DNA of 64,000 bases, taken from the NCBI RefSeq assembly GCF_030028105.1, contig NC_092401.1, positions 7,722,984 through 7,786,983 of the forward strand, written 5' to 3'. The DNA comes from Mobula birostris. Lineage: Eukaryota. The notes beneath the pieces are model-generated. The model searched no databases and was not told where the DNA came from. It saw nothing but the letters and a program-made list of their open reading frames with translations. Positions 5,446-64,000 of the stretch are shown one piece after another; the stretch's first letter is position 1; each line of letters starts with the position of its first letter. The translations under genes were made by a program, and so were the position numbers.

Positions 5446-6407
5446 GTAAAGATGTGAAGCAGGGCTTTACACCTGGATGTCATGGGCAAGCCCCGCTCCC
5501 ATTCCATCTTTCTCCATGCACGTCTGCATTATCTTTCTATAATGCAGTTCGTTGAATCTTAAATGTGCCCGTCCACTTCTCCACAACTTCCTTCAACTTG
5601 CATTCTGAATCCTTCAAGTCTGGCTTTTGTTGAACATGGATAGATTGAGGTTTGGATTGGTCCGACCTCTCTGCCCTAAAATTTGGAGATTCTGTGAAGG
5701 TGATCGGTGGTAAGTAGGTGGCTTCTCCCACAATGATTCTCTTTCTAAGTTTATTTGGAATTTCTACATCAGGGGAAATGAGGTAAGGCTCAAACAGCAC
5801 AGCTCACAACTCATTCACGTAGTTGATTAAAACTGGATGAAATGCCAGATTCATACTGTCCCTTCTATGTTTAAATGCACTTGTTGGCCTCTCTCTCCCT
5901 GCATGGCCTGATTTTCCCCCTCTTTTTTCCCACCTTCGTCTAATTCACCTGCCACTGTCTCCTAACTCCACTCCAAGCCATTTCCTCTTTGACCTGGCGC
6001 ATCTGTCCATCATCTTCCACCTTGTCAGCTCACTAATCACTTTGGTCTGTCTCACCACTCCTGGGGGACCATCTCACTTCTCCCACTCTGTCATGATGAA
6101 GGACTTCAACTCAAAATCAACATTTCCTTTTCTCCCACTGTTGCTGCTTGAACACCCTGCAGCTTTCTGCCAGTTGAATGTTTGATGCGGGCTGTTAGTA
6201 TTTTAGTTTCTTCTTTCTCTTTTTATTCTTGTTCTAAATACTCCCTCTTTATCTTATCTCAGTCAATATCCCTGCTTCCGAAGCTGCTTCCAGTTCTCAG
6301 GGTTTTAGATTTCTTGAGACATCTTTGTTTTTTCATAAGCTTCTCTGAGGAACTTGCAAAAGTTGAAAATACTTAATGCAGAAGTTGGTTACTCTGTAGT
6401 ATGTATT

Positions 6408-7607
6408 TGTCATGGTCCGGTCCGTGAAGTCTGTATTCCGGTTCACGGTCCAGTCCATCGACCCTTGCTCCAGGTTTTCCTGTCTATCCTGTTTCTGTTC
6501 TTGTTGAGCTAATTGAGGCAGCTGATGCTAGTTGGGGCTGGCTGCATAAATACCTTCAGAGACCAGGGTGTGGCTGCTGGATTGTTCTTGTCCTTACTCC
6601 TTGTATCCCTTCCTTGGCCTTCTGTTTCCTCGCCTGAAGCCCTGCCTTGTCTTGCCAGTAACTCTCGCCTCACCTGAAGTTCTCATCTCACCTTGCATTG
6701 CCTGAAGCCTTGCCTGGTCTTGCTGGTAACTCTCGCCTCATCTCGCCTTCAGTCTGGTCCTAGAGCCACCCTGTACCTAGCTCCTTTCCTGTCCCTTGCC
6801 TCTGCCGGGTAAGTCAGGCTGTCTTGCCGTTACCTGCAGTTGGTTCTGTCCCTTCCTGTCCCTTGCCTCCATCAGGTAAGTCAGGCTGTCTTCACATTAC
6901 CTGTGGTTGATTCTGTCCATTCCTGTCCCTTCCTGTCCCTTGCCTCCATCTTGCCGTTACCTGCGGTTGGTTCTGTCCCTTCCTGTCCCTTGCCTCTGTC
7001 GGGTGGTGATCCGTGCCCTGCCCAGGAGTACCATGCCCTACCCAGGTGAACCATGCCATGCCCAGGAGGAGCCTGCCAAGCCTCAAGCCTGAAGACTCTA
7101 GCCTCCTGCCAAGCCTCTAGCCTCTATCCTCAAGCCTGAATACCCCAGCCTCCTGCCTCCTGCCAAGCCTCATCTCCAGCCTCTAGCCTCACGCCTGAAG
7201 ACTCCTGCCTCCTGCCAAGCCTCGTCGCTAGCCTCTAGCCTCAAGCCTGAAGACTCCAGCCTCCTGCCTCCTGCCAAGCTTCGCCTCTAGCCCCAAGCCT
7301 GAAGACCCCAGCCTCCTGCCTCCTGCCAAGCCTCGTCTCCAGCCTCTAGCCTCTAGCCTGAAGACTCCAGCCTCGTCCTTGCCTAGTTCTGGAGTCCAAG
7401 CCAGAGGCAAGACCCAGGTACTGGGTCCTTGTCCAGTCTCTGGCTTGCAGGTCAAGCCCGGGCTCCTAGCTCTCTTGTCCAGTCCTGTTCCGGGTTCCCG
7501 TTTTCGTGTCCATATCCTTGCCCTCAGCCTGTATCCTAGTCCTGTCCCTAGTACTTCAGTGTCTGTGTCTTGCACTTGGGTCCGTTCCCAGCCACCACCC
7601 TATGACA
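6408..7607 (+). mobile_element. Solo LTR with internal tandem repeats
   Basis: TGTCATGG...TATGACA; 5-bp TSD gtatt/gtact; empty site in copy B (~58385); same family as 50241-51189. Confidence 0.9.
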
Positions 7608-7849
7608 GTACTGTCTTTACTGTGACAGTAAAAATGCTGACATATAAAAATAATGCGCATCTTTTCCTGTTCTCATGAAGTACTGTGTATTTTATTAAGG
7701 TCCTGTCCAGAGATGAGTGTGTTTTATAGGCCAATTGATTAGAGTTCAGGATGTGCTTGTCTCTGTACGGGTGAAATGTAAAACATTGGAAGCATTGGTG
7801 AGTTTGAGTGACAAGAGTTATTGAATGTATAGTAAAAAATAAGAGTTCA

Positions 7850-8880
7850 CTCTTACAAGCCAAACTGGATTTTTTGAGCAAGCGATGCAGGGAATTTGTT
7901 TTGGTTGGGCAGTGGATGTCATCTACATGAACATCACTATAGTGTTTGACAAGGTACGTCATGGTCTGATGGTCCAGAACACAAGGGGATCTGTGGATGT
8001 TGGAAATCTTGAGCAACATGCTTTAGATAGACCAACTCAGCAAACCAGGCAGCATCTATGGCGGAGAATACACAGTCAACATTTCAGGCCAAGAAACTCA
8101 TCACTTGCAGGGTCTCTGCACTAAATATTGGCTGATCCAAAGGATTTAGTCAAAATTGGATCACCGGTGAATTGATAAATTGGATGCAAATTTGGCTTTG
8201 TCAGAGAAGACAGGGTAGTGGTTGCAGGTTGTTCATGATGGGTGGACACTAACCACTGATATTCTGTAACTATCAGTGCTGGGGCTTCTGTTTTGTAATA
8301 TATGTTCAAGAGTCTTATTAAAATTTTATGTGCTCTGATCGGGAAGTGTACAGATGAGATGAAAATTAGTGGAGTTGTTGGAGCAGTATACAGATTAGTT
8401 GTAAATTTAAGCAGAGAAATAGCAGCTGGAGTTTCATCTGGACATGAGTAAGGGTCAAATACTGGGGGAAAGTCTACAGCCAATGGCAGGACCCTTGGGG
8501 ACATGAATCTACAGAAGCAACTTGAGGTACAAGTGCACAGCTTGCTGAAGGCGGCAGAATATATGGTCAGGATGGTAAAGAAACCCTCTGGACCAGACTA
8601 TATTTTAGAGGAGACCTTATAACGGATCAGGGTCTTGGCCCAAAATGTCAATGGTGTATTCTCTGCCATAGATGCTGCCTGACCTGCTGAGTTGCTCAAG
8701 ATTCCCAGCATCTGCAGACCCCTTGTGTTCTGGACCACTCTACCATGAGTTACCTTGTCAAACACTTTACTGATGTTCATGTAGACAACATCCACTGTCC
8801 AATCATCACAAATTATCTGTGTCACTCCCTCAGAAATTCCAGTCCTTGTAAGAGTGAACACCCCCATGAGAAAGCCAGGC
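7850..8880. repeat. Inverted repeat (CR1 fragment + Penelope terminal repeat arms) upstream of copy A
   Basis: ~7850-8110 is the reverse complement of ~8620-8880; homologous to the palindrome at 57010-58010. Confidence 0.8.
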
Positions 8881-9099
8881 TGACCATCGCTAATAAGTCT
8901 ATCCTTTACCAAATCAACATACTCCCCCTTAATCTTACCATCACCTATGATCTTCTCTCTGGTGAACACCAATGAAAAGTTCTCATTAAGTATCTCAACC
9001 ATTTTTCCTGCCTTGTGACCAAATTCATTCCATTGTCCATGATTACACAATTTTTTGACTCCTACCATCTTGCTCCCAATACACCTGTAAAATGCCTTG

Positions 9100-9730
9100 A
9101 GATTCTCCTATTGCTGCTATTGTTTAGGGCATTGAGTATAAAGATTGGGAAATTATGTTGCAGCTGTATTAAACTTTGCTTTGGCCACAACTGGGATATC
9201 TCTGGTGTGCAGTTCTGCTTTCCACATTATAGGAAGGATTTGAAGGATTTGGAAAGGGCACGGAACAGGTTTACCAGGATGATGTCTAGATTGGAGTGTA
9301 TTTCCAATCCCAAGAGGCCTGTTTCTCTGTTCTACTGGTCTGTCTGAAGAATGCTCATTGAAATCTATCGAATGTTGACAGGTATTGGAGGGGGAATGTG
9401 CAGGGGATATTTCCAGTGCCGGGGGAGTCTAAAACCAGAGGATACATCCTTATACTAGAAGGACGTTCATTTAGAACGGAGATGAGGAAGAATTACTTTA
9501 GCCGGAGCTTGGACAATCTGAGAAATTTGCTGCCATGGGCGACGATAGAGGACTCATTGGGCAGGATTAAGGCAGAGATTGAGAGGGTCTGGATCAGTCA
9601 AGGCGTGAAAAGTCACGGGGAGAAGGCAAGAGAATGGGGGTGAGAGGGAAATTTATTAGCCATGATGGAATGGCGGAGCACAATCGACGGGCCGAATGGT
9701 TTCATTCTGTTCCTATGTGTTATGGTCCTA
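9100..9730 (+). mobile_element. CR1-type LINE 3' fragment, shared with copy C (63660-64000)
   Basis: Degenerate ORF2 end and ttcctatgt tail; reverse complement present at the window end. Confidence 0.75.
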
Positions 9731-9869
9731 TGGATCCGGCACGAACACCCGCTCATTGTGAGGAGGGTTAGGAACTGAGGTGGATCAGACCACGCATTAT
9801 GTCAGCTCAATAGCTTCTGCCTTTGGGCTGGACTCGGTTCAGCGACGGGGATGAAGAAGCAAAGCGGGA

Positions 9870-10151
9870 GGAAAACTCCCCGACAAACTGAAGCAGCGCC
9901 GATGATTTGGGAGAGTCTGAGAGCTGAGGTTTCGGAAGAAAGCTGAAGACCTTGTGGGAATTGTCCCAGTTCACAGAACTTTAGCAACCACAGTGTGAGG
10001 TGGAGAACTGCAGGTGCTTGTAAGACCAGGCATTTCCGTATATTATCGCTTGACCGAACTTCCTCGGAGCGATGGAGCTTTGTGTGCCCACCGTGACTAT
10101 AGAGACGCTCTTAGTCAGTCGTGAGAAACAGATTTCTCTTCGGGAGCTTTC
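9870..10151 (+). promoter_or_regulatory. Putative promoter/5'UTR of copy A with kB-like and STAT-like motifs
   Basis: GGAAAACTCCCC (9870-9881), GGGAATTGTCCC (9956-9967), TTCGGAAGAA; GGGAGCTTTCTGA is invariant in A, B and both C modules. All deviate from the strict kB consensus. Confidence 0.35.
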
Positions 10152-10214
10152 TGACATTTATCACAGACTGAGATTTTGGCAAAACAACGTATCCCAGCGG
10201 CGATTTCGTAAGCT

Positions 10215-10281
10215 ATGAATTTCAGGCCGATTTCACTGAACGAATCAATTTTCGTTTTCACTTTACTCTTTATAGTAACAG
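10215..10281 (+). CDS. Copy A exon 1: intact signal-peptide exon MNFRPISLNESIFVFTLLFIVT(G), orphaned
   Basis: ATG at 10215, 67 nt, phase-1 donor AG|GTAGGT; 60/67 nt identical to exon 1 of copy B. Confidence 0.75.
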
Positions 10282-10383
10282 GTAGGTAAAGTGATTTAAA
10301 AACATTCAATATACACGTATTTACGCGGACTCACAGAGAATCCGATAACTCTACTTAGTATCTGTGCCACACACACAAAGCAC

Positions 10384-10421
10384 TGGTCCTAATGAAGGGT
10401 CTCGGCCCGAAACGTCGACTG
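10384..10421 (+). ncRNA. Minimal type I hammerhead motif (G5A-mutated) in a Penelope-like terminal repeat
   Basis: UGGUC-CUAAUGA-A-GGG(UCUCGG)CCC-GAAAC-GUC-GACUG: stem I, stem II and palindromic ACGU helix III present; core CUGAUGA mutated. Confidence 0.6.
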
Positions 10422-10924
10422 TTGGCTCTTTTCTATAGATGCTGGCTCACCTGCTGAGCTCCTCCAGCATGTTGTGTGTGTTGCTTGGATTTCCAGAATC
10501 TGCAGATATTCTCGTGTAAGCAACCGTGTATTTTTGCGCTGTATACTTTATTCTGCAGACTGTTACTCGTTTCTCGTTTTTATTCGTCGTCTCCGGCTTG
10601 CAGAACAAAAGAGAAATTTCACATTGATTTGTACTTCAACCGCAGAATGGCTGGAGAGATGAAAAATGGGAAAAAATGGGCACCGAGTAAATATTTGCAC
10701 AATTCACAGACGGGCTTTCAAACAGTTTCATGTTTAGTGAATTTTACACGTCATTTTGCCCATGATGTCGGAAGCGTGGCATTGTTCAGTATTGAGGACC
10801 GTTACAGACCACGTGCCTCTCGGTGATCCATTCCGACTCCCCGTCTGAGCGTAAAACTGTGGATCAGCCGCCAAGACTCAAATGATCCCAGATACAATTC
10901 GGTTTGTTTATTCATTCATTCATT

Positions 10925-13900
10925 CGTATTCCCGATGAATTGTTAATCCGCCTGTTAAATACTGTTAAAGTTGCGATTGTAGGTGGAGGTTTAATAAAAT
11001 GGCTCGCGCAACTCTGGTTTGAACGCAGACGAGCGTTGACATAGCGGTAGCTGAGGGCGGAGATTTCAAAGACTGGGTTCTATCATTTCTGAGGAGTGGT
11101 CAGATTTGCAATGTCTAGTTAGTCCCCATTCCCCAGGGGAGAATGAGAATTCTGAGGTAGTATCCGCCCTTAGCTCTCTGGCGAAAATTGGGAAAATGCC
11201 CAGGTTCAAAGTCCCAGCTGTGTTTGGCTCTGCCTATTCTCTGGAATACGCCCACCCCGAAAGGGGAAGAGGAGGATGAAACTTGAACGGAGCAGACCTC
11301 CCAGTTGTTAGGCGAATAGCAGTGCTCTGATGACGTCAGGCGACAGGGATTGGTTGAAAGTTTGAATGGGTGGGCCGCTGACGTTGTAAGAGCCGTCAGG
11401 TTACGGTATCCCGTAGCGACGGCTATCATGCAAGCATTAGACGATGCTTTTAGTCCGACTGGAAGCCAATGGAGCTCAAGGTCAGGAACTTGCGTCAAGA
11501 GGAGCGGGGAAAAGCTTTCTGCTTTTATTTTTCGGCTAGAGAGGCAGTTAAGTTGCTCGCAGCGCAGAGGGGTCATTCAGGCGGCTGAGGTGGATCAGTT
11601 ACGAATGGACCAGATATAGCCAGGAGCGCCCAGTCCCATGACCTGATTGCTTGGGGTCTCTGACAGTCTCGCAAGACGCCCCTCTCCATCTTTTGAGCTG
11701 ATCAGAGAGGTAAGGGAAGAGAAGAATGCGGCGGAGGCGCTGGAGGGCTTAGTCGGCGGGGTACAGTCCTCGGTAGTAGTCCCCTGCGGTGAAGTGACCA
11801 CAGATAGCCTACCCCGGGGAGCGGTAGAGGAAATTGTGGCAGGGTTGAGAACGAAGATGTTTCGACTGTTATCAGCAGATGTGACACCCCCCCCACCCCA
11901 TATTATGGAGCTGATTGGGGTTGCGCTATCCCCTAAGGGGACGTACAATGCGGAGGGCTGCTGGCAGCAGGAGTCACGCCAGAAGGAGAGTGAGTCCCCG
12001 GGTACCTCAGCAGGGAGAGTCGTTGGGAAAACTTAGAGGAGACCCAGTGAGGGAACGGCCTGGTGTCTCTGGGGGAACACGTTCCCAGCAATGTACCAAG
12101 GAACCCCCGAAAGGGAAAGGCCCAATTCCTGAAGGTTTATTGGGACCACGCTCCAGTGTGTCGCTATGGATAGAGGGTATTTATGCTAAAGCCAAACTCG
12201 ACACCGGGTCGCAGGTCACGTTGTTGTACTGTTTGTTTTACAGCCGGTAATGAAGCATTTACCCTTGACACCATTCCGGGCACTGGAGATCTGCGGGCTT
12301 AATGTTAGTGATTATCCGTATGACGGTGATTTGTCAGAGAAGTTGGAGTTCTCGGAGGCCGATGTGGGAGTGTCGGAGGTCGTTGATACATCGGTGCCGG
12401 ATTGTCCAGACCCTGCTGAGAAGGGTGGCGTTTCAATTCTGGTGGAGACCAACACCCCTCTGGTGAGGAGACTCATGGGGGCCTGCAAGGAGAAGGCTGG
12501 CGAGAGATTTTTTGGAACATCGTCCGTGCACCCGGTGTTTCGAGCTGCTGTTGAGGAAGTTCGTGGCTGCATTAGGCCGAATTCCGAATTTAGACGAGGG
12601 ACTGTGCGGTTCTCCCAGTCAAAGCCAATGGTGGTACGGCCCGGGAAGTAGCAAGAGTGATGGGAAGCCCCACATTTCCAGGAGGGCCTGAGGGCGGGGG
12701 CCTCTTACTGGACGCTTCGGAACACCACGAGGGAGAGTCGGGATTTCCTGCTGGGGTACTGCTGAGACCCGAATTGCAGGCAAGCAGGATGGCAGTGATT
12801 GTCAGGAACTTCACGAAGAGGGAGGCCACCTTCCAGCGGGGGATGCCCCTGGTCCATTTGTTCCCGGTGACGGCAATGTCTAGTGTCCCTATGAGGCATG
12901 CCAGGACAAACCATTGGACAAAGCGGGGAAAGTCATTCAACTTTGGGCACTCCCCGATGCCGCCGGGTTGGAAGAAGAGGTTGGTAGAGATGATGTTGAA
13001 GCTGGAAGGTGTCTTTTCCACTGATGAGTTTGATGTGAGTTGTTCCAAGAACACGCGTCACACTCTCCAGGTGACTGAGGATACTCTGTTCAGAGAAAGG
13101 TCGCGGCGACTGGCCCCCGCACTGTTGGAGGACGTTCGGCAGCATTTGTGTAAGGTGAAGCAGGCCGGGATCATCACCGAGTCCCAAAGCCCGTGTGCGT
13201 CCCCAGTAGTAGTGGCCCGAAAGAAGAATGGGAAGGTACGGATGTGTGTGGACTTTTGGATTCCGAACGAGCGTACCGTCCCTGACCAGTATACTGTCCC
13301 GAGGATTGAAGACGCACTGGCCTGCTTGAGTGGTGCAAAGTGGTTTAGTGTGCTGGATTTGAGGAGTGGATATTACCAGATCCCCATGAATGAGGTCGAC
13401 AAGGAGAAAACGGCATTTATATGTCCCCTAGGATTTTTCCAGTTCGAAAGGATGCCCCCAGGGCATCCCGGGAGCTCCTGCAGCCTTCCAGCGGGTCATG
13501 GAGAAGAGGGTGAGGAATATGAACTTGCTTGAGGTATTGGTGTATCTGGATGGCCTCGTAGTGTTTGGATCCACCTTGGAAGAACATGAACCGAGGCTGC
13601 TGAAGGTGCTGGGCCGCCTGAAAGCTGAAGGGTTAAAACTTTCCCTGGACAAGTGCCAGTCCTGCCGAACGTCTGTTAGCTTTGTTGGGCACATAGTCTC
13701 ATGGGATGAAGATCTAGCTAAGATAGAGCCGGTTACCACTTGGCCAAGATCCCAGACCGTGAGCGCTCTGCGCTCGTTCCTCGAGTTCTGTGGGTACTAT
13801 CGGAGGTTCGTTAAAGGCTACGCGAATGTGAGTCACCCGTTGAATCAGCTTCTGTGCGGTTACTCTCCCTTGGGGAAGAAAGGGAGGGGGAGAAAAGGAC

Positions 13901-16890: not shown

Positions 16891-17881
16891 TATGTATTTA
16901 TATTTATTGTGTTTTAATTATTATTGTATTTTTATCTTTTTTAGCTGCATTAGATCCTGACTAACAATGATCTTGTTTCCCTTTACAGTTGTTTACAGGA
17001 CATGATATTAAACAATCTTCAACCTTGAGTGTTGAACGACAGGAGTCCCATGTTCTCTAAATAACTCCATGTGTCACTGATGTCTCAATTTCTACCTCGC
17101 CCTTCCTAAATATATTCAATGACGTGACCTTTCTGTACATTTTGGAAAATTTTTCTCCACAGCTCAATCCCTCCATCCTGAAACAGCAATTTGGCATGTC
17201 TCTGCCAATCAGGTCTTAGGGAGGAGTCAAATCAGATCCACCCATGTTAGAACAGAGTGACTTTTAATGTCTTTATTCAAAGATTCAATTTACATTTATT
17301 ATCAAAGGATGTACACATTATACAGCCTTGAGATTCATCTCCTAACAGTCAGTCACAAAACAAAGATACCCAAAGTAATCTGTATAAAACGACTGTCTAA
17401 CACCCAAAATGCAGAGATAAAAAATCACATTCCCATAAAATAAGAAAATGACTGAAAAATTCCTTCTGTTTGAATACACAAGGGCTAAAATTATGCTGAC
17501 ATGCGTTTATATTATGTGGAAATAGACAGGAAGCTAACTGCATAGAATACGAGCCCTTCACTACGATTTTTCTCCACACATCCTCGTGCATCCCGAATCT
17601 GCAAACCCTTAGCCAGGGAAAGTATATCTCCTGCATCCAACCTCTCGAGATCTGTCAAAACGCCATACATTTGATTAGATCTTCACTAATTCTTCCAAAC
17701 CTTCGTGTTAATGGGCCACAGTGACTCAATCTCTCTTCATACGCCAGTCCTGCCATCCCCGGAATCAGTCTGGTGAACCGTCCCCTCACTGTCTGAACGG
17801 TAAGTATATCCATTCTCAGCTGAGATTGAACTGCACACAACACTTCACTGAACAGATTCCATTTCCCTGTGTGTGTGTGTG

Positions 17882-18800: not shown

Positions 18801-19028
18801 CTTTTGTCTTCCCCATTCCTTTCCAGGATAGCTGCTGTTTCTAAAAATGGAAAACTGTGGAACTGGAGGCAAAGTTTCGGGGTGAGTGGGTGGTCATTTG
18901 GGACTGAATTAGGGAGGAGTTTCTTCTCTCCAGTTGTGAATTGATGGAATTCTTCATGCACAGGTTGTGGTTGCGCCATCACTAAACATATTAAATGGAA
19001 TTTGGTCCGGGTAGGATTAGAATACAAA

Positions 19029-19751: not shown

Positions 19752-19951
19752 TTAGAACTTTGAATTTACTTCTGTTAAAAATTCCTGATCATTCCCAGAA
19801 GGGATGTCCTGATTTTTGTGGGGTGCTGCATTCATGACGTTGTGATGTCCTGTTTTCTGAGCTCTGTTTCTTAGGATGCAGGTGATGACCAGCACGAGTA
19901 ATAGTATTAGGATGGGTAGCAAGATCATCAACACCATCTTTCAAACATCAT
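19752..19951 (-). CDS. Last exon: TM + cytoplasmic tail, with in-frame TGA at 19941-19943
   Basis: Acceptor ttccccag|AT GAT GTT TGA AAG ATG; MVLMILLPILILLLVLVITCILRNR is a hydrophobic helix with basic stop-transfer residues; TAA at 19752. Confidence 0.85.
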
Positions 19952-33228: not shown

Positions 33229-33231
33229 TTT

Positions 33232-43400: not shown

Positions 43401-43689
43401 GGACAGCGACTCGAAGCAGCGGCCCCTAAGAGAACCGCTCACTGTCCTCCAGATTTTCCTTGATGTTTCAATCTTCCTTGACGCTTCAATCAGCCAGATA
43501 TGGAGACAATCACAGCCCCTTGTCTCGTCTTCGAGCTTCTCCTCGTGGTAGCTCGTGTTTACGCTTCACTCCTGGAGTTCTCTCAGGGACAGCAGGGCGC
43601 GAACCCACTCAATTGAACTACAGACTGGAAGTCACAGGCTCCAACAGTTTCAAAAACAAAATTAGAATAAAAAGAAGAAGTTGAAGATG

Positions 43690-51189: not shown

Positions 51190-51580
51190 GGTTTTTTTTC
51201 TTCTTGGTGCGATGGACGATGGGAGATAACCTGGAAGAGGTGTACAGAATGATGAGAGGCATTGATCATGTCGATAGCCAGCGGCTTTTTCCCAGGTTTG
51301 AAATGTCTGACACAAGGGGGTATAGTTTTAAAGTGTTTGGAAGTAGGTACAGAGAGGACATCAGAGTTAAGTTATTCACACAGAGAGTGGTGGGTGTGTG
51401 GAACGCACTGCCAGCAATGGTGGCGGAAGTGGATACATTAGCTTTTATAAGTGACTGTCAGATAGAGCTGAGAAAAATAGAGGGCCATGCTGTAGGGTAA
51501 TTCCAGGCAGTTTGTAGAGGAGGTTAGATGGTTGGCACAATATTGTGGGCTGAAGGGCCTGTAATGTGCCGTAGATTTCT

Positions 51581-54507: not shown

Positions 54508-55618
54508 TGTGCTGTAGATTTCTATGTTCTATTCCCCCTTCTCTAGCCCCTTATCTCTTCCCCAAATCAACTTCCCAACTCCTTACTTCACCCTTCCCCC
54601 TCTCCCGGTTTCACCTGTCAGCTGCCACCTTGTGCTTCTTCTGACGTCTCCCCTTCCTTCCCAGACCTGATGAAGGGTCTCAGCCTGAAAGGTTGACTGT
54701 TTAATCATTTATGTCGATGCATCCTGTCCTGTTGAGTTCCCCCAGCATTTTGTGCGTGTTGCCAGAGGCTCAGTGGTTGTTTAAACCAACCAACAGAATG
54801 CGAAAAAGGCGTGGTCGAAGTGACTTGGACCATAGAATGAGATGGTTTGAGTATCTCAGAAACTGCTGATCTCCTGAGAATGTTGCAAAAAGAATCAACA
54901 ACTAGGTGCGCAGCTGTTCTGTGGGTGAAAAAGATTTGTTCATGAGGTAAGAGGAGAATAACCAGTCTGGTTCATGCTGACTGAAGGCGACAGTAATTCG
55001 AATAACCACACATTACAACAGTGGTGTGCAGAAAAGACAACATGTCGAACCTTGAGATGGATAGGCTGCAACGCAGAGGAACGCGAGCATACACTCAGTT
55101 GCCAGGGAGGTAAGTGATAAAGTGGACAACAAACAAAAACTGGTCAAATTGTATCTGAGATCATTTGAATCTTGGCGACTGATCCACAGTTTTACGCTCG
55201 GACGGGGAGTCGGAATGAATCACCAAGAGACATGTGGTCTGTAACATAGCAGCCCGTGCCCAGTCTTCAATACTGAACATGGGAGTAGAGAGCAGTAACC
55301 GTGAAACAAAATGTGACGTTTCCCACATCATGGGCGTGTAAGATTCATTAAATGTGAAGCTGTTTTAAAGCGAATTGTGCCCATTATTCCCTATTTTTGT
55401 CTCCCTACCCATTCTGCAGTTGAAGTACAAATCAATCTGAAATTTCTCTTTTGTTCTGCCAAGCCAAAGACGACGAATAAAAACAGGAAATGAGTTACGG
55501 TCCGCAGAATAAAGCACACAACGCAAAAGTACACAGTTACTAAGTACAGTTACCATTTAATACTTGACCCCGCGTAAATACGTGTATATTGAATATCTTT
55601 AAAAGACACTGAACCTAC

Positions 55619-55685
55619 CTATTACGATAAAGAGTAAAGTGAAAACGAAAAATGATTCGCTCAGTGAAATCAGCCAGAAATCCAT
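55619..55685 (-). CDS. Exon 1 of copy B: signal peptide MDFWLISLSESFFVFTLLFIVI(D)
   Basis: ATG at 55685, 67 nt, donor AG|GTAGGT, phase 1 matches the D1 acceptor. Confidence 0.85.
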
Positions 55686-57009
55686 AGCTTTCGTAATCTC
55701 CGGCGGGTGTGTTTTACAAAACGTCAGAAAGCTCCCAAAGAGAAATCTGTTCCTCACGGCTAAGAGCGTCTCTGTGGTCTCAGTGAGTGCACGAAGCTCC
55801 AACGCTCCGGGGAAGTTCCAATGCTTCGAAGAATTTCGTTCAAGCGATAATAGACGGAAATGCCTGGAGCTGACTGTCTCACAGTCATCTGCAGATCTCC
55901 AGTTTACACTCGCGTTAACGCTCTAATCCAGGCAGGGAGCCAAAAGCTGGATTCTTTGTTAACTTTATTGAATTTTCTGATTGAGAAGACCAGCAAGTTT
56001 TGTCCATCCTTAACTTGCCTTGAGACCGTGGTGGTCAGGCAGCGCTTTGAGCTGTTGCAATCCTCTGTTGAAGATTGTCTGGCAGTCCTCTGCAGCAGGT
56101 TCTCACAGTGATGATGTACAATGGCAGTGGGCTCCCGTGTCAAGATGGTCTCTGACACGGGGGTGGGGAGAATCCAAAGGAGGTGATATTCCAACGTACC
56201 TACTTATAGAATTATACCACACCATTTGGCATGAAATACAGTTGTGTGACATCATTACTTCTGACCCTTGATTAACCCGACAAATATTGGTCAAACTGCA
56301 ATCCTCATTAATTCATATGCACCCAAAAAGTTGCATTCCTGAAAGATAGACCGGTAGATCACAGAAACAAGCTGCCTGGCCCATATTGTCTGCACCAGTC
56401 TTATCACCCGGGGTGAAGTCTCTGACTACCCACCCATCTCCTGTCTGATATACCAGAGAAAACAGTTCAACTTTATTTATTGACTTTTAATTCTTTTAGA
56501 GATACAGCATGAAACAGGCCCATCCAGATCAGTGAGCCACACCGCCCAGCAACCCACTTTAACACGACCCTGATCACGGGATAATTTTAAATGACCAATT
56601 AACCTACTAACTGGTACGTCATTGGAGCGTGTTAGAAATCTGGAGCATCTGGTGGAAACCAAGGCAGTCACAGCGAGACCAGATGGTGCTGGAATTGAAC
56701 TCCGAAGTCTGACACCTCAGGCTGTGATAGCATTGTGCTAACTGCTACACTTGTTGGTCCATTCTCTTCTTATACGTAATACACTCCAACCCGGGCATCA
56801 GCCTGGTGAAACTGGTCCTGCCCACTCCAAAGCCTCCACATCCTTCCTATAGGGTGGAAACCAGTTCTCCACACATTACTCCAAATGCGGCCAAACCAAA
56901 GTTGCACCAGCTGCCACGTGATTTCCCAATCTTTATACTCAATGCCCTAAACAATGGCAGCAACAGGAGAATCTCGGGGCGTTTTGCAGGTGTAATGGAA
57001 GCAAGATGG

Positions 57010-58010
57010 TAGGAGTCAAAACGTTATGTGCAATCATGGACAATGGAGGGCATTTCGTCACAAAGGCAGGAGAAAAGGGTGAGGTGCTCAATGAGAACTT
57101 TTCATTGGTGTTCACCAGAGAGAAGATCATAGATGATGGTAAGATTAAGGGGCAGTATGTTGATTTGGTAAAGAATGGACTCATTAGCGATAGTCAGCCA
57201 GGCTTTCTTGTAGGAAGGTTCACTCTCACAAGTTTGACTGGATTTATTGAGGGAGTAATGCAGATAATTTGTGATGGTTGGGCAATGGATATCATCTACA
57301 TGAACAGCAGTACAATATTTGACAAAGTATCCCATGGACTAGTGGTCCAGAACACAAGAGAATCTGCAGATGCTGGAAATACTGAGCAACACACTTTAGG
57401 TAGATGAACTCGGTAAGTCAGGTAGCATCTATGGTGGAGAAACAACAGTCAACATTTCAGGCCAAGACACTGACCTGTTGTATGGTCTCTATACTAAATA
57501 TAGTCTGTTTCAGAGGATTTAACTAGATGTACTCATTAAGTCTGCCAGCATCTATGGCGGATTTAGTGCAGAGACCCTACAACAGATGAGTTTCTTGGCC
57601 CGAGATGTTGACTATAATTTCCGCCATAGCTGCTACCTGATTTGCTGAGTTGGTCTAGCTAAAGCATGTTGCTCAAGATTTCTAGCATCCTCAGAGCCCT
57701 TTGTGTTCTGGACCATCCTACCATTAGGTAGCTTGTCAAGTTCTGTACTGATGTTCATGTAGAGAAATTATCTGTGTCAGTCCCTCCAAAATTCCAGTCA
57801 AGCTTGTGAAAGCGAACCTCCCCATAAGAAAGCCAGGCTGACTGTTGCAAATAAGTCCCCTTTACCAAATCAACATACTCCCCGCTAAATTTTACCATTC
57901 TCTATATCTACCAATAAAAAGTTCTCATTAAGAACCTCACCCACTTCCTCTGCCTTTGTGATCAAACGACCTCCATTGTCCATGATTGGACCTAGCCTTT
58001 TGATTCCTAT
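57010..58010. repeat. ~1-kb imperfect palindrome upstream of copy B
   Basis: 57010-57470 pairs with 57590-58010; spacer ~120 bp. Confidence 0.85.
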
Positions 58011-59914
58011 TTTCTTGCTCACAATGTACCTATAAAATGCCTTATAATTCTCTTTAATCCCACTTGGCAGGGACATTTCTTAGCCCTTTGTAATCCATCA
58101 AAATATCTAATTGAATTTCCTTCCTGCTTCCCTTGGGCATGGTGTCATTTCAGCTTCCTAAGCTGTACATAGGCTGCCTGTCAATTTTTCACTAAGCATA
58201 CAATAACTCTTGTCCTCACCAAGATTTCCCATGTTTTATTTGCACCTACACAAAGGCAATCAATTAGCCTTAAAACAAACTCATCTGTGGACAAGACCTT
58301 AATAAAATCCACAGTACTTCATGAGAACAGGAAAGATTCACATTAATTTTATATGGCAGCTATTTTTAATGCCAAAGTTAAGACAATACGCAATAGAGTA
58401 ACCAGCTTCTGCATTAAATATTTTCAACTTTTGTAAGTTCTTCAGAGACACTTTTCAAAGAGCACAGATGTCCCAAGAAATCTATAAGCTTGAGGACTGG
58501 AAGCAGCTTAGGAAGCAGGGATATTGACCAAGAAAAGATAAAAGAGGGAGTATTTAGAACAAGAATAAAAAAGAGAAAAAAACCCAGTCTGCATCAAATA
58601 ATCAACTAGTGGAAATCTGCAGGTCAGTCCAGCATAGGCTGTGGGAGAGAAGAAAATGTTGTTTCGAGTTTCCGCGGACCGAGAGTGGGAGAAGTGAGAT
58701 GGTCTCTCAGGAAGAACGATGAGGCAGGAGTCCAAGGTGCTTAGTGGGCTGAGGATGTGTACAATGATAGGCAGCTGTGCCAGGTCAAGGAGGAAAGTGA
58801 TAAGTGGAGCTAAGAAACAATGGCAGGTGTATTACACGGGGCAGAAAAAGAGAGGGGGAAATGAGAGGCAGATGGAGCAAGGTGGGAGGAGGGGAGTATG
58901 AGGTCTGGAGACAGCTACAACAGGTAGATAAGCAGGAACACAAAGGGACACCAGTGCTGGTACCTGGTTAGCATGAGTTTGAGAATGGTATCCATTAGTT
59001 GGGACGTGAATAGCAGATGGAGGACCAGATGGGGAGAGAGGGCGAGCGTATGGGCCAACTGTGTGTGGATGGAAAAAGGATAGTGAAGAGAATATAGATA
59101 GATCATGGGGGTTGATGGACTGGAGGTGGTGGCGAAGGTTGTTGCATTTGAGGGATAGGGGACAAACATGGGGAGAACAGAGGAGGATTGGAAGAAGGGG
59201 GCAGTATAGATCTAAAAGCTTGAACAAGACACGTTGGTTCATTTCAGTAATATTTTGCGAGCTGTTTTTAGAAGAATCAAGTTTGTGCTATTCCTGGCTT
59301 TCACCTCAGGAAGAGAGATGGAAAAGGAATATGTGGACTTTAAAGTAATTAACGTCACTAAGGAATGAATCCTGGAGAGAGTGAGGAGCCTAAAAACTGA
59401 CCAGTCCCTCTGCCCTGACAATCTTTATACAGAGAATTTCAAGATTTGGCTGCAGAGACAATTTTTACGATGTCCCAAAATCCCTGCAAATCTGGAACAG
59501 CCTCAGTAAACTGAAAGGTAGAACATGTAACATTGCAATTCAGTCAGAAATAGAGAGAATATATTGAACTAATCTGCAGTCAAACTGACATCAGTTTTTT
59601 GTTACTTGCTTGAATCCAGAATGTGTTGCAGTGCAAAGTAAATGAGGAATGTCTTTGATCCAAACTTCATTCCAGTCGTTCTGCAGGACAATTGTAATCT
59701 CAGTGGCGTTCATTGCAGTTTCAGTTCTCAGGTGATGCTCCAGTGTCTGTGGGAATCATTGTAACACAGGGGTTCAGACTGGACCCCCAAAGCAGAGCAT
59801 TCTCGGCACTGAGCAGGTACAGTGGGGCTACGTATTAACACTGTAGTCAGAAGCTATCCTCAATAAGAATACGATCTACAGCATCATTAGAATATCTGTC
59901 CACAATCAGCATGT

Positions 59915-62900
59915 TGTGCTATTGATAATAAACGTAATTTGAATCTTTAAATAAGGACATTAAATGTCACTCTGTTCTAACATGGGTGGCTCTGATTTGA
60001 CTCCTCCCTAAGATCTGATTTGCAGAGACATGCCAAATTGCAGTTTTGGGATGGAGGGGTCAAGCTGAGGAGAAGATTTTCACGGACATGTAGAGAAAGG
60101 TCAAGTCGCTGAATACATTTAAGAAGGGCGAGGTAGAAATTGAGACATCAGTGACACATGGAGTTATTTAGATAACACGGGACTCCTGCTGTTCAACACT
60201 CAAGGTTGAAGATTGTTTAATTGCATTTCCTGTAAACAAGTGTAAAGGGGAACAAAGTAGCTATTAGTCAGGATTTAATGCAGCTAAAAAACACAAGAGA
60301 TAAAAACACAATAAATATAAATACATACGTAACCCTTGGTTCGGCTAGCGGCTTAATCTAGGGGATGATAGCCCCTGGCCCGGCCAAATTTAAGAAATCC
60401 CGTTTGGGTGGATGCTGTGCGATATGTCCCCTGTTACAAATCAGTACCACGAAATGACAAACAGTACAGCGATTAAACGATTAAGCTTTATAATTCTTAA
60501 TTTGACTATTTGGTTATTAAAGAAACAAGAAAAAAGGGCCCATTCTCATTAAACAGTCTAATGCGCAAACGTTGGAGCTCACAGCACAGTCCATTTGTTC
60601 CCGTCGTCCTCCTCTGAGCGTAACCGACCCTCGGACCCTCGCTCGTCAGTCCACTCCGTTCGGAGGTCTACCAATTCTCTCCATTCGCATCCTCACTCTT
60701 CATTGCTCCCCGACAAAAGACCGCAAATTCCCGGCTCCCAGACACACAAGAGAGAACAACATCCCGCTCCTTAGCTAATATGCCCCGTTATCTCTAGTCA
60801 TAACCCAAATATTGCTGCGACAGAGAAACTATTACCTTAGCCTTAGCAGTGAAACATGACAGAGAGGCCACTACATAGCAGTGAAACCTTACAGCGGGTT
60901 ACACATAATATAGCTCACTGAATATACGTCCATTGACTGTATGTCCATAAAGTGATGCAGAAGGTAACTGACAAATGATAATAAAGAGGTGGTGGAATTA
61001 ATGGGGGGGGGTGTTGACCAGCCTTATCGCTTGGGGTAAGTGTCTGTTTTTGAGTCTGATGGTCCTGGCGTGGATGCTACGTAGCCTCCTCCCTGATGGG
61101 AGTGGGACAAACAGTCTTTGAGCAGGGTGGGTGAGATCCTTCAAGATGCTACTGGCTCTTTTCCAGCAGCTGGGCTGGTGCGGCCGGTGCAATGGACAGC
61201 CCTGACTATCTGTTGTAGGGCCTTCCCGTCCATCACGGTACAGTTTCTGTACTATACGGTGATACAGCCTGATAGGATGCTTTCTCTTGCGCATCTGTAA
61301 AATGCCAGAAAGTGGAGGTGTTGATGAGCATTCGTGACTGTGTAGGATGTGTTATCAGTAGAGGTTATCAGTGCTGAACACTCCCAGGAGTTTGAAACCA
61401 GTCGCAGTTTCCACCGCTGTGCCGCCGATGTAGTAAGGGGTGTGAGTTCTTCTGAAGTCCATAACCATCTCCTTTGTCTTGCTGACATTAATGGCGAGTT
61501 TATTTTCCTGACACCCGTCATTGAGCTCTTCGACCCCCTTTCTGTAGGTCATCTCATCGTTGTTGGTGATGAGTCCCACCGCTGTTGTGTCGTCGGTGAA
61601 CTTGACATTGTGATTGCTCGGGTGTTTGTCCGTCAAGTCATGTGTGAGCAGAGTGTACAGCAATGGGCTCACCCTGGGGGTGGGGGGCTGGGGGGAGAGT
61701 GGCTGTGTTGAGGATGATAGTGAAGGAGGAACGGTTGTGCACTCGGACCCTCTGATATCTGTTCGTTAGAAAATCCAACACCCCGTTGCACAGTGGTGTA
61801 CTTAGACCGAGGTTTGTTCACCACGGTCTGGGAGACACTGTGCAGTTAGAGGTCTGCCCCGCCCCCCCCCCATTTCTAATTCCACACAATATAAATGTTT
61901 GTCAGTATAACAATGCCCCCTAGCACGTTAAAACTGAAGAAACAAACAAACAAATAAATAGGCCGAATTGTACCTGGGATCATTTGAATCTTGGTGGCTG
62001 ATCCACAGTTTTACGCTCAGACGGGGAGTCGGAATGGATCACCGAGAGGCACGTGGTCTGCAACATATCAGCCCGTGTCCAGTCCTCAATACTGAACATG
62101 GGAGTAGACAGCAGTAACCGTGAAACAAAATGTCACACTACCCACATCATGGGCAAAATGACATATAAAATTCACAGTGTGAAACTGTTTGAAAGCCCGT
62201 CCGTGAATTGTGTAAATAATTTACCAGGCGCCCATTTTTTATCTCTCTAGCCATCCTGCATTTGAAGTACGAATCAATGTGAAATTTAGCTTTTTGTTCT
62301 GCCAAGCCAAAGACAACGAGGAAAACCGAGAAATAAGAAACGGTCCGCAGAATAAAGCACACAACGCAAAAATGCACAGTTACTTACACGAGAATATCTG
62401 CAGACGCTGGAAATCCAAGCAACACGTACAACATGCTGGAGGAGCTCAGCAGGTGAGCCAGCATCTACAGAAAAGAGTCAACAGTTGACGTTTCGGGCCG
62501 AGACCCTTCATCGGGACTTGTGCTTTGTGTGTGTGGCACAGATACTAAGTACAGTTATCGGATTCTGTGTAGTCCGCGTAAATACATGTATATTGAATGT
62601 TTTTAAATCACTTTACCTACCTGTTACTATAAAGAGTAAAGTGAAAAAGAAAATTGATTCGCTCAGTGAAATCGGTTGAAATTCAAAACGTCGGCAGGAT
62701 ATGTTGTTTTGCCAAAACCCTGTCTTTGATAAACTTCAGAAAGCTCCCGAAGAGAAATCTGTTTCTCACGACTAACAGCGTCTCTGTGGTCTCAGTGACT
62801 ACAACAAGCTCCAATGCTCAAGGAAGTTCATTCAAGCGATAACAGACGGAAATGCCGGGAGCTGACTGTCTCACAGTCATCTGCAGATCTCCAGCTCACA

Positions 62901-64000
62901 CTCGCGTTAACGCTCTAATCCAGGCAGGGAGTCAAAAGCCGGATTCTTTGTTAGATTTATTGAATTTTCTGATTGAGAAGACCAGCAATTTTTGTCCATC
63001 CTTAATTTGCCTTGAGAGCGTGGTGGTCAGGCAGCTCTTTGAGCTGCTGCAATCCTCTGTTGAAGATCCCCTCACAGTTCTTTGCAGCAGCTTCTCACAG
63101 TGATGACGGACAATGGCAGTGGGTTCCCGTATCAAGATGGTCTCTGACATGGGGGTGGGGAGAATCTGAAGGACGTGATATTCCAATGTACCTACTTGTA
63201 GAACTCAGTCTTTGATAAACGTCAGAAAGCTCCCGAAGGGAAATCTGTTTCTCACGACTGACATAGCATCTCTATGTTCGCAGTGAGCGCCCGAAGCTCC
63301 AACGCTTCAAGGAAGTTTGGTCAATTGATAACATACAGAAATGCCTGGAGCTGACTGTCTTACAAGCACCTGCAGTTCTCCAGCTCACACTCACACTGTC
63401 GTTGTTAAAGTTCTGTGAACTCGGACAATTCCCACAAGGTCTTCAGCTTTCTTCCGAAACCTCAGCTCTCGGACTCTCCCAAATCATCGGCGCTGCTTCA
63501 GTTTGTCGGGGAGCTTTCCTCCCGCTTTGCTTCTTCATCCCCGTCGCTGAACCGAGTCCAGCCCAAAGGCAGAAGCTATTGAGCTCACGTAATGCGTGGT
63601 CTGATCCACCTCAGTTCCTAACCCTCCTCACAATGAGCGGGTGTTCGTGCCGGATCCATAGGACCATAACACATAGGAACAGAATGAAACCATTTGGCCC
63701 GTCGAATGTGCTCCGCCATTCCATCATGGCTAATAAATTTCCCTCTCACCCTCATTCTCTTGCCTTCCTCCCGGGACTTTTCACGCCTTGACTCAACAAG
63801 ACCCTATCAATCTCTGCCTTAACTCTCCCCAGTGACTTCACTTCTATCGTCACCTATGGCAGCGAATATATACATATTGTCCACGCTCTGGCTAAAGAAA
63901 TACTTCCTCATCTCCGTTCTAAATGGACGTCCCTCTATTATGAGGTTGTATCCTCTGATCTTAGGCTCCCCCACCATAGGAAACATTCTCTGCACATTCC
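59915..64000 (-). pseudogene. Copy C: tandem duplicate of promoter/exon 1/intron 1 with degenerate exon 1 (62621-62686)
   Basis: ATG changed to TTG plus a 1-bp deletion, donor intact; intron colinear with A and B; ends near an LTR-like terminus (TGTAACAC at 59760). Confidence 0.88.
60328..60903 (-). mobile_element. Solo LTR of the Gypsy family found at 10925-16890
   Basis: 4-bp TSD CATA (60324-27, 60904-07); matches the 16492-16890 LTR and its right flank. Confidence 0.92.

What the first reader, a model, noticed from the sequence alone, without database searches (positions are those of the whole stretch)
5900..64000. Three copies of an ICAM-like promoter/signal-exon module share one set of downstream exons
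Copies A (+), B (-) and C (-) each carry the upstream region, a 66-67 nt exon 1 and colinear intron 1. Only B continues into Ig exons; A and C both stop at an LTR or LTR-like sequence. A and C share two insertions that B lacks (a Penelope repeat in intron 1 and a Gypsy at a TATG site), so they are sister copies. Inference: this is birth-and-death evolution of an adhesion-gene cluster, with the regulatory front end retained.
Basis: partly seen in the sequence, partly recalled or inferred. Interest (0 to 1): 0.7.

Follow-up and report, generated by a model that had tools for sequence, protein, structure and literature searches.

The report
Dead ICAM-like gene, two orphan starts
In a manta-ray cluster of ICAM-like adhesion genes, one gene that is itself broken is flanked by two leftover copies of only its promoter, signal-peptide exon and first intron; this is ordinary decay after partial duplications, not three starts sharing one gene body.

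Summary
Three 80-88% alike copies of upstream region, 67-nt signal exon and intron 1 lie at A 9992-10912 (+), B 55910-55128 (-) and C 62902-61945 (-).

- **A and C are sisters.** They share three insertions that B lacks: a Penelope-type repeat, an LTR at a TATG target site (solo LTR in C, Gypsy body plus 3' LTR in A, empty site in B), and a third repeat.
- **Only B has Ig exons.**

The title's reading fails.
- A faces B on the opposite strand and loses homology 3-4 nt before the D1 splice acceptor, where an LTR begins.
- C has no ATG and ends inside a repeat.
- Upstream region plus exon 1 are no better conserved than intron 1.

B is itself broken. Its D1 exon is 265 nt, which shifts the frame. 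Two family-conserved cysteines are lost. A TGG-to-TGA stop precedes the transmembrane segment. An RNA-like contig still shows D1 spliced at its donor.

Neither assembly gap touches the three modules. Gap 1 hides the end of B's fourth Ig exon. The scan holds similar birth-and-death notes for this cluster. Verdict: ordinary partial duplicates in a decaying gene cluster; low interest.

The parts
5913..9316 (+). Far-upstream block of A, colinear with the block upstream of B (58861-56764). It is mostly old transposon sequence and is interrupted in A by a private 1.2-kb insertion (6408-7606).
   Evidence: Self-BLAST; K2P distance 0.17-0.26.
9393..10214 (+). Proximal upstream region and 5' flank of copy A. 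9393-9991 is shared with C only (64000-63393).
   Evidence: A-C K2P distance 0.085.
10215..10281 (+). Copy A exon 1. It is 67 nt, with ATG and GT donor intact, and encodes MNFRPISLNESIFVFTLLFIVT.
10282..10912 (+). Copy A intron 1, 5' part. It contains the hammerhead-core (Penelope-type) repeat 10360-10521, which is shared with C.
10913..16894 (+). Ty3/Gypsy-type element in A. It has the gag-RT-RNase H-integrase order and a 3' LTR at 16492-16890, itself interrupted by a repeat at 16621-16785, followed by the target-site copy TATG at 16891-16894. The 5' LTR and about 1 kb of intron are missing.
   Evidence: Pfam PNMA, RVT_1, RT_RNaseH, Integrase_H2C2.
16891..17879 (+). Copy A intron 1, 3' part, matching B 42695-41839. 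It carries the third A/C-shared insertion at 17275-17448. Homology stops 3-4 nt before the position of the D1 acceptor.
17882..18941 (+). LTR (17882-18372) that replaces the D1 acceptor in A, followed by a weak gag-like ORF (18510-18941). It is 87% alike to the LTR at 35767-35265 (-).
19755..19951 (-). B transmembrane/cytoplasmic exon with an in-frame TGA at 19943-19941, where four relatives have Trp (PDDVW KMVL...).
24679..24923 (-). B fourth Ig exon. Its 3' end is hidden in assembly gap 24546-24678.
26182..26475 (-). B third Ig exon, 294 nt, matching Pfam ICAM1_3_5_D2. The second conserved Cys is replaced by Gly (GGC 26251-26249).
27818..28129 (-). B second Ig exon, 312 nt.
41570..41834 (-). 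B D1 exon (Pfam ICAM_N). It is 265 nt, not a multiple of 3. Deletions near 41590-41580 shift the frame ahead of the conserved ...PVY|N end. The second Cys of the CSTxC motif is Tyr (TAT 41745-41743). An RNA-like contig covers it and departs at the donor.
41835..55618 (-). B intron 1. It holds an empty TATG site at 42695-42692, a LINE 3' fragment at 43708-44614 shared with C, and a B-private 10.5-kb block of transposons at 44615-55127.
55619..55685 (-). B exon 1, 67 nt, encoding MDFWLISLSESFFVFTLLFIVI.
55686..56211 (-). B proximal upstream region, including a 300-bp element (55911-56211) shared with C (62903-63203) and absent from A.
56764..58861 (-). Block upstream of B that is colinear with A 5913-9316. 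It contains a palindromic transposon remnant at 56967-58052.
59900..60327 (-). Copy C intron 1, 3' part (60323-59953), matching A 16895-17274 and B 42691-42298. The first ~45 nt of the third shared insertion follow, and there homology to A and B ends.
60328..60907 (-). Solo LTR in C (60903-60328), with TATG target-site copies at 60907-60904 and 60327-60324.
61057..61934 (-). LINE 3' fragment in C intron 1, shared with B (44614-43708; K2P distance 0.11) and deleted in A.
61945..62902 (-). Copy C module. The exon-1 relic is at 62687-62621 (no ATG, donor kept) and the shared Penelope-type repeat at 62543-62382.
62903..64000 (-). C upstream region. The B-like 300-bp element (62903-63203) lies between two copies of the 190-bp promoter-proximal piece (62716-62902, B-like; 63204-63392, A-like). 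A-like upstream sequence then runs to the window end.

Best explanation
The window holds one decaying member (B) of a large ICAM-like gene cluster of a manta ray, plus two orphan 5' fragments (A, C) left by DNA-level partial duplications.

**Inferred history**
1. The B lineage and the A/C lineage separated first.
2. The A/C ancestor then acquired a Penelope-type repeat, a Gypsy element at a TATG site and a third repeat.
3. That copy was duplicated again. One copy (C) lies in tandem upstream of B. The other (A) is inverted and lies tail-to-tail just beyond B's last exon.
4. In C the Gypsy collapsed to a solo LTR and the copy now ends inside the third repeat. C also lost its ATG and received a B-like ~450-bp patch in its promoter, by gene conversion or unequal exchange.
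5. In A the 5' LTR and ~1 kb of intron were deleted, and an LTR now sits where the D1 acceptor and every later exon would be.

**Consequences**
- Neither A nor C can make an ICAM-like protein.
- The three modules do not share B's exons as alternative starts.
- B still has signal, D1, three further Ig exons and a TM/cytoplasmic exon, and it appears to be transcribed and spliced. But it carries a frameshift, two lost structural cysteines and a stop before the TM segment. It is most likely a transcribed pseudogene.

**Basis of each step**
- Shown: the copies, the insertions, the lesions, and the lack of extra conservation.
- Inferred: the order of events, the mechanism of each truncation, and that contig X1 is RNA.
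For: **Copies and colinearity**
-.

**Shared insertions and B's empty sites**
-.

**Distances**
- Module: A-C 0.14, A-B 0.19, B-C 0.18.
- Intron 3' part: A-C 0.13, A-B 0.175, B-C 0.21.
- A-C LTR and proximal upstream region: 0.083-0.091.

**A's truncation**
- It falls 3-4 nt before the D1 acceptor.
- No second set of Ig exons exists in the window.
- C has no ATG.

**No constraint on the front end**
- Upstream region plus exon 1 diverge 0.16-0.18; intron 1 diverges 0.11-0.16.

**ICAM identity**
- Pfam ICAM_N 26.2 bits (cut-off 21) and ICAM1_3_5_D2 36.1 bits (cut-off 27.5).
- A D1 profile hits human ICAM-2, -3, -1 and -5 structures. VCAM-1 is far weaker.
- The nearest proteins are 'ICAM1-like' or 'VCAM1-like' of Mobula birostris and M. 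hypostoma.

**B's lesions**
- The D1 exon is 265 nt; D2 is 312 and D3 is 294. The conserved ...PVY|N end is out of frame.
- Cys to Tyr in D1, where 11 of 11 relatives have Cys.
- Cys to Gly in the third Ig exon, where all D3-type domains of relatives have Cys.
- TGA where Mobula and Pristis relatives have Trp.
- No annotated protein matches B's exons above 94%.

**Transcription**
- Run X1 covers only 41569-41777 among the unique sequence of the stretch laid. It has zero depth in the flanking intron bins.
- A 333-nt contig matches 209 nt without mismatch and leaves the genome at the D1 donor.
- The DNA contig X4 rec 16 reads on into the intron.
Against: - No transcript data could be obtained at any of the three exon-1 sites. 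Activity of A's or C's promoter is therefore untested.
- A keeps an intact ATG, signal-peptide ORF and GT donor.
- The tool labels X1 'RNA? (probably DNA)'. The first letter of the contig after the D1 exon fits neither the canonical D2 acceptor nor the alternative one.
- A second AG 14 nt inside D2 (cttaag|C) would restore the frame after the shifted D1. The stop before the TM segment could then give a secreted protein, so B might not be entirely dead.
- Local patches contradict a clean (A,C),B tree. A 300-bp element is shared by B and C only. B-C distance in the LINE fragment is 0.11. A-B distance in the last 430 bp of intron 1 is 0.12.
- Gap 2 lies between D1 and D2, so their linkage rests on the scaffold.
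- C's far-upstream region lies outside the window.
Confidence: 0.75

Rival explanations
1. The extra modules are retained because they work. C would act as an alternative promoter and non-coding first exon for B. A would act as a promoter driving a new or antisense transcript that runs into B's 3' end or into the adjacent LTR.
For: - A keeps its ATG, signal ORF and GT donor.
- C keeps the donor and lies upstream of B on the same strand.
- About 200 bp of upstream sequence is alignable in all copies.
- B appears to be transcribed.
Against: - Upstream region and exon 1 are no better conserved than intron 1.
- C has no start codon.
- A is on the opposite strand and has lost the acceptor and all Ig exons.
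- The gene they would serve is itself disabled.
- No RNA run on record was found for the species.
Confidence: 0.08
2. B is not a pseudogene. It would be a working gene for a secreted, structurally relaxed ICAM-like protein, made by using the second AG in D2 and ending at the stop before the TM segment.
For: - Joining the shifted D1 end (GTA CA) to cttaag|C GTT GTT is in frame.
- The TGA lies just before the TM helix, so the product would be soluble.
- The D1 exon appears in an RNA-like contig spliced at its donor.
- The Glu that aligns with the integrin-binding Glu of ICAM-2 and ICAM-3 is kept.
Against: - There are four independent lesions, including loss of two cysteines that are invariant in relatives.
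- The alternative acceptor lies behind a stronger AG with the polypyrimidine tract.
- The letter after the D1 exon in the contig is G. It fits neither acceptor.
- No matching annotated protein was found.
Confidence: 0.1
3. A and/or C are assembly artefacts: uncollapsed haplotypes or misjoined contigs.
For: - There are two assembly gaps in the region.
- The sequence is rich in repeats.
Against: - The copies differ by 8-20% and by private transposon insertions and deletions. That is far beyond allelic variation.
- No gap lies inside or next to A or C.
- DNA contigs of the species reproduce the B stretch that was laid.
Confidence: 0.02
4. The modules were moved by transposons (transduction or capture by the flanking LTR or LINE elements) rather than by segmental duplication.
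For: - Every copy is bounded by transposon sequence.
- A is followed directly by a Gypsy body and an LTR.
Against: - The copies include upstream DNA, the intron, older nested repeats and the same target-site duplication. That is DNA-level copying of an already transposon-laden segment.
- No poly(A) tail, no loss of the intron and no element termini bracket a module.
- The flanks of the two related LTRs differ (GTGTG against CAGAG). They are therefore not the two ends of one element.
Confidence: 0.05

Closest known systems
ICAM family (mammalian ICAM-1 to -5) and the automatically annotated 'ICAM1-like / VCAM1-like' genes of sharks and rays, e.g. XP_072104660.1 of Mobula birostris and XP_062891853.1 of M. 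hypostoma
   Same: - B has a signal exon of the same type as XP_072104660.1 (MNFWPISL...FIVTG).
- Its N-terminal domain is ICAM_N type, with the CSTxC motif and a Glu that aligns with the integrin-contact Glu of ICAM-2 and ICAM-3.
- It has one Ig domain per phase-1 exon.
- It has a single TM/cytoplasmic exon.
   Different: - B has a frameshifted D1, two missing cysteines and a stop before the TM segment.
- Its exons are only 67-94% identical to the nearest annotated proteins.
- A and C consist of the first exon and intron only.
Gene fragments left by partial segmental duplication in birth-and-death multigene families (own knowledge: Nei and Rooney's model; examples are KIR/LILR, MHC and olfactory receptor clusters)
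   Same: - Tandem and inverted paralogous pieces of differing completeness lie next to a decaying gene.
- The copies differ by private transposon insertions.
- There are patches of gene conversion.
   Different: - Here the fragments keep only the promoter, the signal exon and intron 1.
- One of them ends within a few nucleotides of the exon-2 acceptor.
Solo LTR formation by recombination between the two LTRs of a Ty3/Gypsy element
   Same: - C has a 576-bp LTR with TG...CA-type inverted ends and TATG on both sides.
- A keeps the internal genes and the 3' LTR at the same site.
- B has the empty site.
   Different: A's 5' LTR was removed by a larger deletion, not by LTR-LTR recombination.
Penelope-like elements with minimal hammerhead ribozyme motifs (PMC4209133)
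   Same: The repeat shared by A and C holds C(U/C)(A/G)AUGA-AGGGUCUCGGCCC-GAAAC-GUC. That is the order of the hammerhead core.
   Different: - Both copies carry a substitution in the CUGAUGA box.
- No Rfam hammerhead model matches, even at E 10.
- No Penelope-like reverse transcriptase lies next to it.

Membership tests
ICAM family (gene B) | N-terminal domain of ICAM_N type | tested here: met
   - Pfam PF03921 scores 26.2 bits against a cut-off of 21, over the first 45 residues of the exon.
- A D1 profile that includes B hits ICAM-2 (E 2e-9), ICAM-3, ICAM-1 and ICAM-5 structures.
- VCAM-1 reaches only E 0.4.
ICAM family (gene B) | Two conserved disulfides in D1 (CxxxC paired with C...C) | tested here: not met
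   The second Cys of CSTxC is Tyr in B (TAT 41745-41743). It is Cys in 11 of 11 relatives.
ICAM family (gene B) | Acidic integrin-contact residue in D1 (Glu34 of ICAM-1, Glu37 of ICAM-2 and ICAM-3; residue numbers from own knowledge) | tested here: inconclusive
   An invariant Glu (VLEYKPG in B) aligns with the LE-T Glu of ICAM-2 and ICAM-3 in the profile alignment. Binding itself cannot be tested here.
ICAM family (gene B) | ICAM-type membrane-proximal Ig domains followed by one TM helix and a short cytoplasmic tail | tested here: inconclusive
   - ICAM1_3_5_D2 matches at 36.1 bits, above the 27.5 cut-off, but on the third Ig exon.
- The TM/cytoplasmic exon is present and 70-75% identical to Mobula paralogs. 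A TGA precedes it.
Functional protein-coding gene (gene B) | Open reading frame across canonical splice junctions | tested here: not met
   - The D1 exon is 265 nt between two phase-1 sites.
- Joining it to the canonical D2 acceptor gives a stop after 10 codons.
- There is a nonsense codon at 19943-19941.
Alternative first exons of one gene (A, B, C as a set) | Same strand, upstream of a shared acceptor, and each able to start translation or serve as a 5' leader | tested here: not met
   - A is on the opposite strand and downstream of B's last exon.
- C lacks an ATG.
Alternative first exons of one gene (A, B, C as a set) | Transcripts that join each first exon to the common exon 2 | not testable with these tools
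   - No RNA run on record was found for the species.
Ty3/Gypsy LTR retrotransposon (insertion shared by A and C) | gag-PR-RT-RNase H-IN order, LTRs with TG...CA ends, 4-5 bp target-site duplication | tested here: met
   - PNMA-type gag, RVT_1, RT_RNaseH and Integrase_H2C2 occur in that order at 11320-15214.
- The LTR reads TGTAACCC...GGGTTAC(A/G) and is flanked by TATG/TATG in C.
Penelope-like element (repeat shared by A and C) | Hammerhead ribozyme motif in the terminal repeat; Penelope-type RT with a GIY-YIG nuclease | tested here: inconclusive
   - A hammerhead-like core is present but mutated.
- There are no Rfam matches.
- The associated reverse transcriptase was not examined.

The most novel reading that the evidence does not exclude
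The orphan front ends are still live promoters. A, which keeps its ATG and donor and points at B's 3' end, would drive an antisense or LTR-chimeric transcript. C would feed a non-coding leader into B. Dead 5' fragments would then modulate expression within the ICAM-like cluster, or B would make a secreted decoy.
Probability: 0.07. Interest if true: 0.45.

Novelty: new member of a known kind. Interest (0 to 1): 0.2.

Why it matters
Mainly as annotation hygiene.
- Gene predictors could stitch A's or C's signal exon to neighbouring Ig exons, or call B as coding. The neighbouring paralog models in both Mobula assemblies already span about 87 kb.
- The shared insertions and the empty site give a clean relative chronology for part of a large, uncharacterised ICAM-like expansion in rays.
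- The locus is a worked example of how partial duplicates arise and decay.

It opens no new biological question.

Tried and rejected
- **Rfam.** A search of the whole window at gathering thresholds, and of the shared repeat at E 10, gave nothing. The Penelope label therefore rests only on a hand-found hammerhead-like core.
- **Paralog DNA.** Fetching the DNA of the nearest paralog genes to place A, B and C in a family tree failed. Both look-ups returned gene tables only, because the sample's file is too large.
- **RNA runs.** No holder is on record as RNA. Three small runs labelled 'RNA?' exist. One of them (X1) behaves like RNA on the D1 exon.
- **Inversion between the two related LTRs.** I considered that 17882-18372 (+) and 35767-35265 (-) are the two ends of one element split by an inversion. 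That would have put D2 to TM behind A. I rejected it because the outer flanks differ (GTGTG against CAGAG), each LTR sits in a locally consistent context (5' LTR then gag; integrase then 3' LTR), and D1 would still be missing.
- **More exons.** I searched both strands for further Ig or TM exons, using ORF scans, a hydrophobicity scan and tblastn. The only new exon found was B's TM exon.
- **Far-upstream A/B block.** Whether it is part of the duplicated unit or independent copies of one transposon could not be settled from one window. Colinearity and similar divergence favour the former.
- **Ig-motif regex scan.** The first scan returned nothing. It was replaced by direct reading of the ORFs.
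Full report
**1. What is in the sequence**

The window has two N runs, 24546-24678 and 40721-40849. Self-BLAST and a three-way alignment confirm three copies of one module.

| Copy | Coordinates | Strand |
|---|---|---|
| A | 9992-10912 | + |
| B | 55910-55128 | - |
| C | 62902-61945 | - |

Each copy holds about 220 bp of upstream sequence, the signal-peptide exon and the start of intron 1.

- Exon 1 is 67 nt in A (10215-10281, MNFRPISLNESIFVFTLLFIVT) and in B (55685-55619, MDFWLISLSESFFVFTLLFIVI). Both end AG|GTAGGT.
- C keeps the donor (exon end 62621). An 11-nt deletion removed its ATG, and no in-frame start lies upstream.
- Colinearity resumes further into intron 1. A 16891-17273 matches B 42695-42298 and C 60323-59953. 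A 17449-17879 matches B 42295-41839.

**2. The gene body**

Ig-type exons exist only once, all on the - strand.

| Exon | Coordinates | Length | Note |
|---|---|---|---|
| D1 | 41834-41570 | 265 nt | Pfam ICAM_N |
| Second Ig | 28129-27818 | 312 nt | |
| Third Ig | 26475-26182 | 294 nt | Pfam ICAM1_3_5_D2 |
| Fourth Ig | from 24923 | unknown | runs into gap 1 at 24679 |
| TM/cytoplasmic | 19951-19755 | 197 nt | |

tblastn with these exons and with nine ray paralog proteins finds no further copy on either strand. B is therefore the only module followed by Ig exons. A lies beyond B's last exon and points towards it.

**3. What family it is**

- A search of 1.8 billion representative proteins with D1 gave only 20 hits. 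All that I looked up are shark or ray proteins named ICAM1/2/4/5-like or VCAM1-like.
- The closest are XP_072104660.1 (Mobula birostris) and XP_062891853.1 (M. hypostoma).
- A D1 profile hits human ICAM-2, -3, -1 and -5 structures, and VCAM-1 only weakly.
- An invariant Glu aligns with the LE-T Glu of ICAM-2 and ICAM-3.
The protein names agree with that.

**4. A and C are sisters**

They share three insertions at identical sites, where B is uninterrupted.

- **Repeat in intron 1.** A 162-bp repeat lies at A 10360-10521 and C 62543-62382. B is continuous at 55539/55538. Its core, C(U/C)(A/G)AUGA-AGGGUCUCGGCCC-GAAAC-GUC, has the layout of the minimal hammerhead found in Penelope-like elements (PMC4209133). 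It is mutated in both copies and is not recognised by Rfam.
- **LTR retrotransposon at a TATG site.**
  - C has a 576-bp solo LTR (60903-60328, TGTAACCC...GGGTTACG) with TATG on both sides.
  - A has the internal region in gag-RT-RNase H-integrase order, a 3' LTR at 16492-16890, and then TATG.
  - B has the empty site CTTATG|TAG at 42695-42692.
- **A third repeat.** It begins at A 17275 and C 59952.

The distances agree.

| Segment | A-C | A-B | B-C |
|---|---|---|---|
| Module | 0.14 | 0.19 | 0.18 |
| Intron 3' part | 0.13 | 0.175 | 0.21 |

The LTR and the A/C-only upstream segment differ by 0.083-0.091.

**5. How the two fragments end**

- **A.** Its homology to B's intron stops at 17879 (B 41839), 3-4 nt before the D1 acceptor AG. 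An LTR (17882-18372, TGTCAG...CTGACA) follows, and then a weak gag-like ORF. A also lacks the Gypsy 5' LTR and about 1 kb of intron that B and C keep. That lost stretch includes a LINE 3' fragment (B 44614-43708, C 61934-61057).
- **C.** It ends about 45 nt into the third shared repeat. About 1 kb that I could not classify comes next. Then comes the block that lies upstream of B (58861-56764), which is colinear with the block upstream of A (5913-9316).
- **C is a mosaic.** A B-like patch (63203 to about 62750) sits between an A-like and a B-like copy of the 190-bp promoter-proximal piece. The patch includes a 300-bp element that A lacks. This points to gene conversion or unequal exchange between the tandem neighbours.

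**6. No sign that the front end is kept by selection**

Over three-way aligned columns, upstream region plus exon 1 diverge 0.16-0.18 and intron 1 diverges 0.11-0.16. In no pair is the front end the more conserved part.

**7. B is broken too**

Four lesions emerge from comparison with relatives.

- **Frameshift in D1.** Relatives end D1 with ...KC(V)xPVY and a split Asn codon. B has cca gtg tac a|gtaagt at the same donor, but 12-nt and 2-nt deficits just upstream put it out of frame. The exon is 265 nt between two phase-1 sites. With the canonical D2 acceptor, a stop follows after 10 codons.
- **Cys to Tyr in D1.** The second Cys of CSTxC is Tyr in B. It is Cys in 11 of 11 relatives.
- **Cys to Gly in the third Ig exon.** All D3-type domains of relatives have Cys there.
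- **Stop before the TM segment.** The TM exon reads PDDV-TGA-KMVL..., where Mobula paralogs read PDDVWKMVL....

No annotated protein matches B's exons above 94%.

**8. Reads**

- No RNA run is on record for the species.
- I laid four runs on 41400-44700.
- Run X1 comes from the same sample as the assembly and is labelled 'RNA? (probably DNA)'. It has depth only inside the D1 exon among the unique sequence, and none in the flanking intron bins.
- Its contig 1 is 333 nt long. It matches 41777-41569 without a mismatch and then continues for 124 nt that are not in the stretch.
- The DNA contig X4 rec 16 reads through into the intron.
- X1's depth on the exon equals that of the DNA run, while on high-copy repeats it is about 15-fold lower. 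It is therefore not whole-genome DNA.
- I read this as a spliced transcript of B. It also confirms the letters of the frameshifted region, although in the same individual.
- A second X1 contig has 18 differences and 8-fold higher depth. It carries TGT at the Cys/Tyr codon, so it comes from a paralog.
- The letter that follows the exon fits neither candidate D2 acceptor. This is unexplained.

**9. Gaps**

- Gap 1 hides the last ~11 codons and the donor of the fourth Ig exon.
- Gap 2 lies in intron 2, between D1 and D2.
- Neither gap touches A, C or B's module.
- Continuity across them could not be tested. No letters were looked up.

**10. Verdict**

The functional reading is not supported: there are no shared downstream exons and no evidence that the regulatory front end is retained by selection. 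The locus is a transcribed pseudogene flanked by two orphan 5' fragments. It is a routine product of partial duplication, transposon insertion, deletion and conversion in a birth-and-death cluster. The scan holds similar notes for the same cluster (s1-146087, s1-145974).

Noticed in passing
window 41569-41777: A contig of run X1 matches the D1 exon exactly and leaves the genome at the donor. Its next letter is G, which fits neither the canonical D2 acceptor (A) nor the frame-restoring one 14 nt inside D2 (C). The exon that B's D1 is joined to is unknown.
   Followed up: partly
window 62716-63392: The 190-bp promoter-proximal piece occurs twice in C, on either side of a 300-bp element that B also has and A lacks. 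The distal copy is A-like (0.13). The proximal copy is B-like (0.11). This is either a conversion or unequal-exchange patch, or an ancestral duplication that collapsed in A.
   Followed up: partly
window 56967-58052, and 7845-8148 with 8581-8859: A palindromic (inverted-repeat) transposon remnant with degenerate reverse-transcriptase fragments is present upstream of both A and B.
   Followed up: no
window 6408-7606 and 50242-51189: A 1.2-kb insertion private to A's upstream block is related (69-76%) to a piece of B's intron 1. Both contain 52/111-bp or 21-bp tandem repeats (7076-7374; 50645-50757).
   Followed up: no
window 1-336: A 45-bp unit is repeated in tandem 7.4 times (91% matches) at the window start. 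Gypsy-related fragments follow at 337-1117.
   Followed up: no
window 22271-24456: A LINE with an endonuclease (Exo_endo_phos) and a reverse transcriptase lies on the - strand, directly after gap 1 in B's intron between the fourth Ig exon and the TM exon.
   Followed up: partly
window 41871-42089, 17629-17847, 9127-9728, 63661-63989: The last ~220 bp of intron 1, and part of the proximal upstream region of A and C, are themselves old fragments of the LINE family seen at 46777-47869 (58-65% alike).
   Followed up: no
neighbouring genes: The nearest intact paralog has a gene model spanning about 87 kb in both Mobula birostris and M. hypostoma, for a protein of about 660 aa. Such a model could be skipping over dead copies like the ones here.
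   Followed up: no
window 42510-42953 and 43731-43841: Contig depths of 40,000-150,000 in the DNA runs mark extremely high-copy repeats of the genome. One of them begins TTTATTATCAAAG..., the same family as the third insertion shared by A and C.
   Followed up: no
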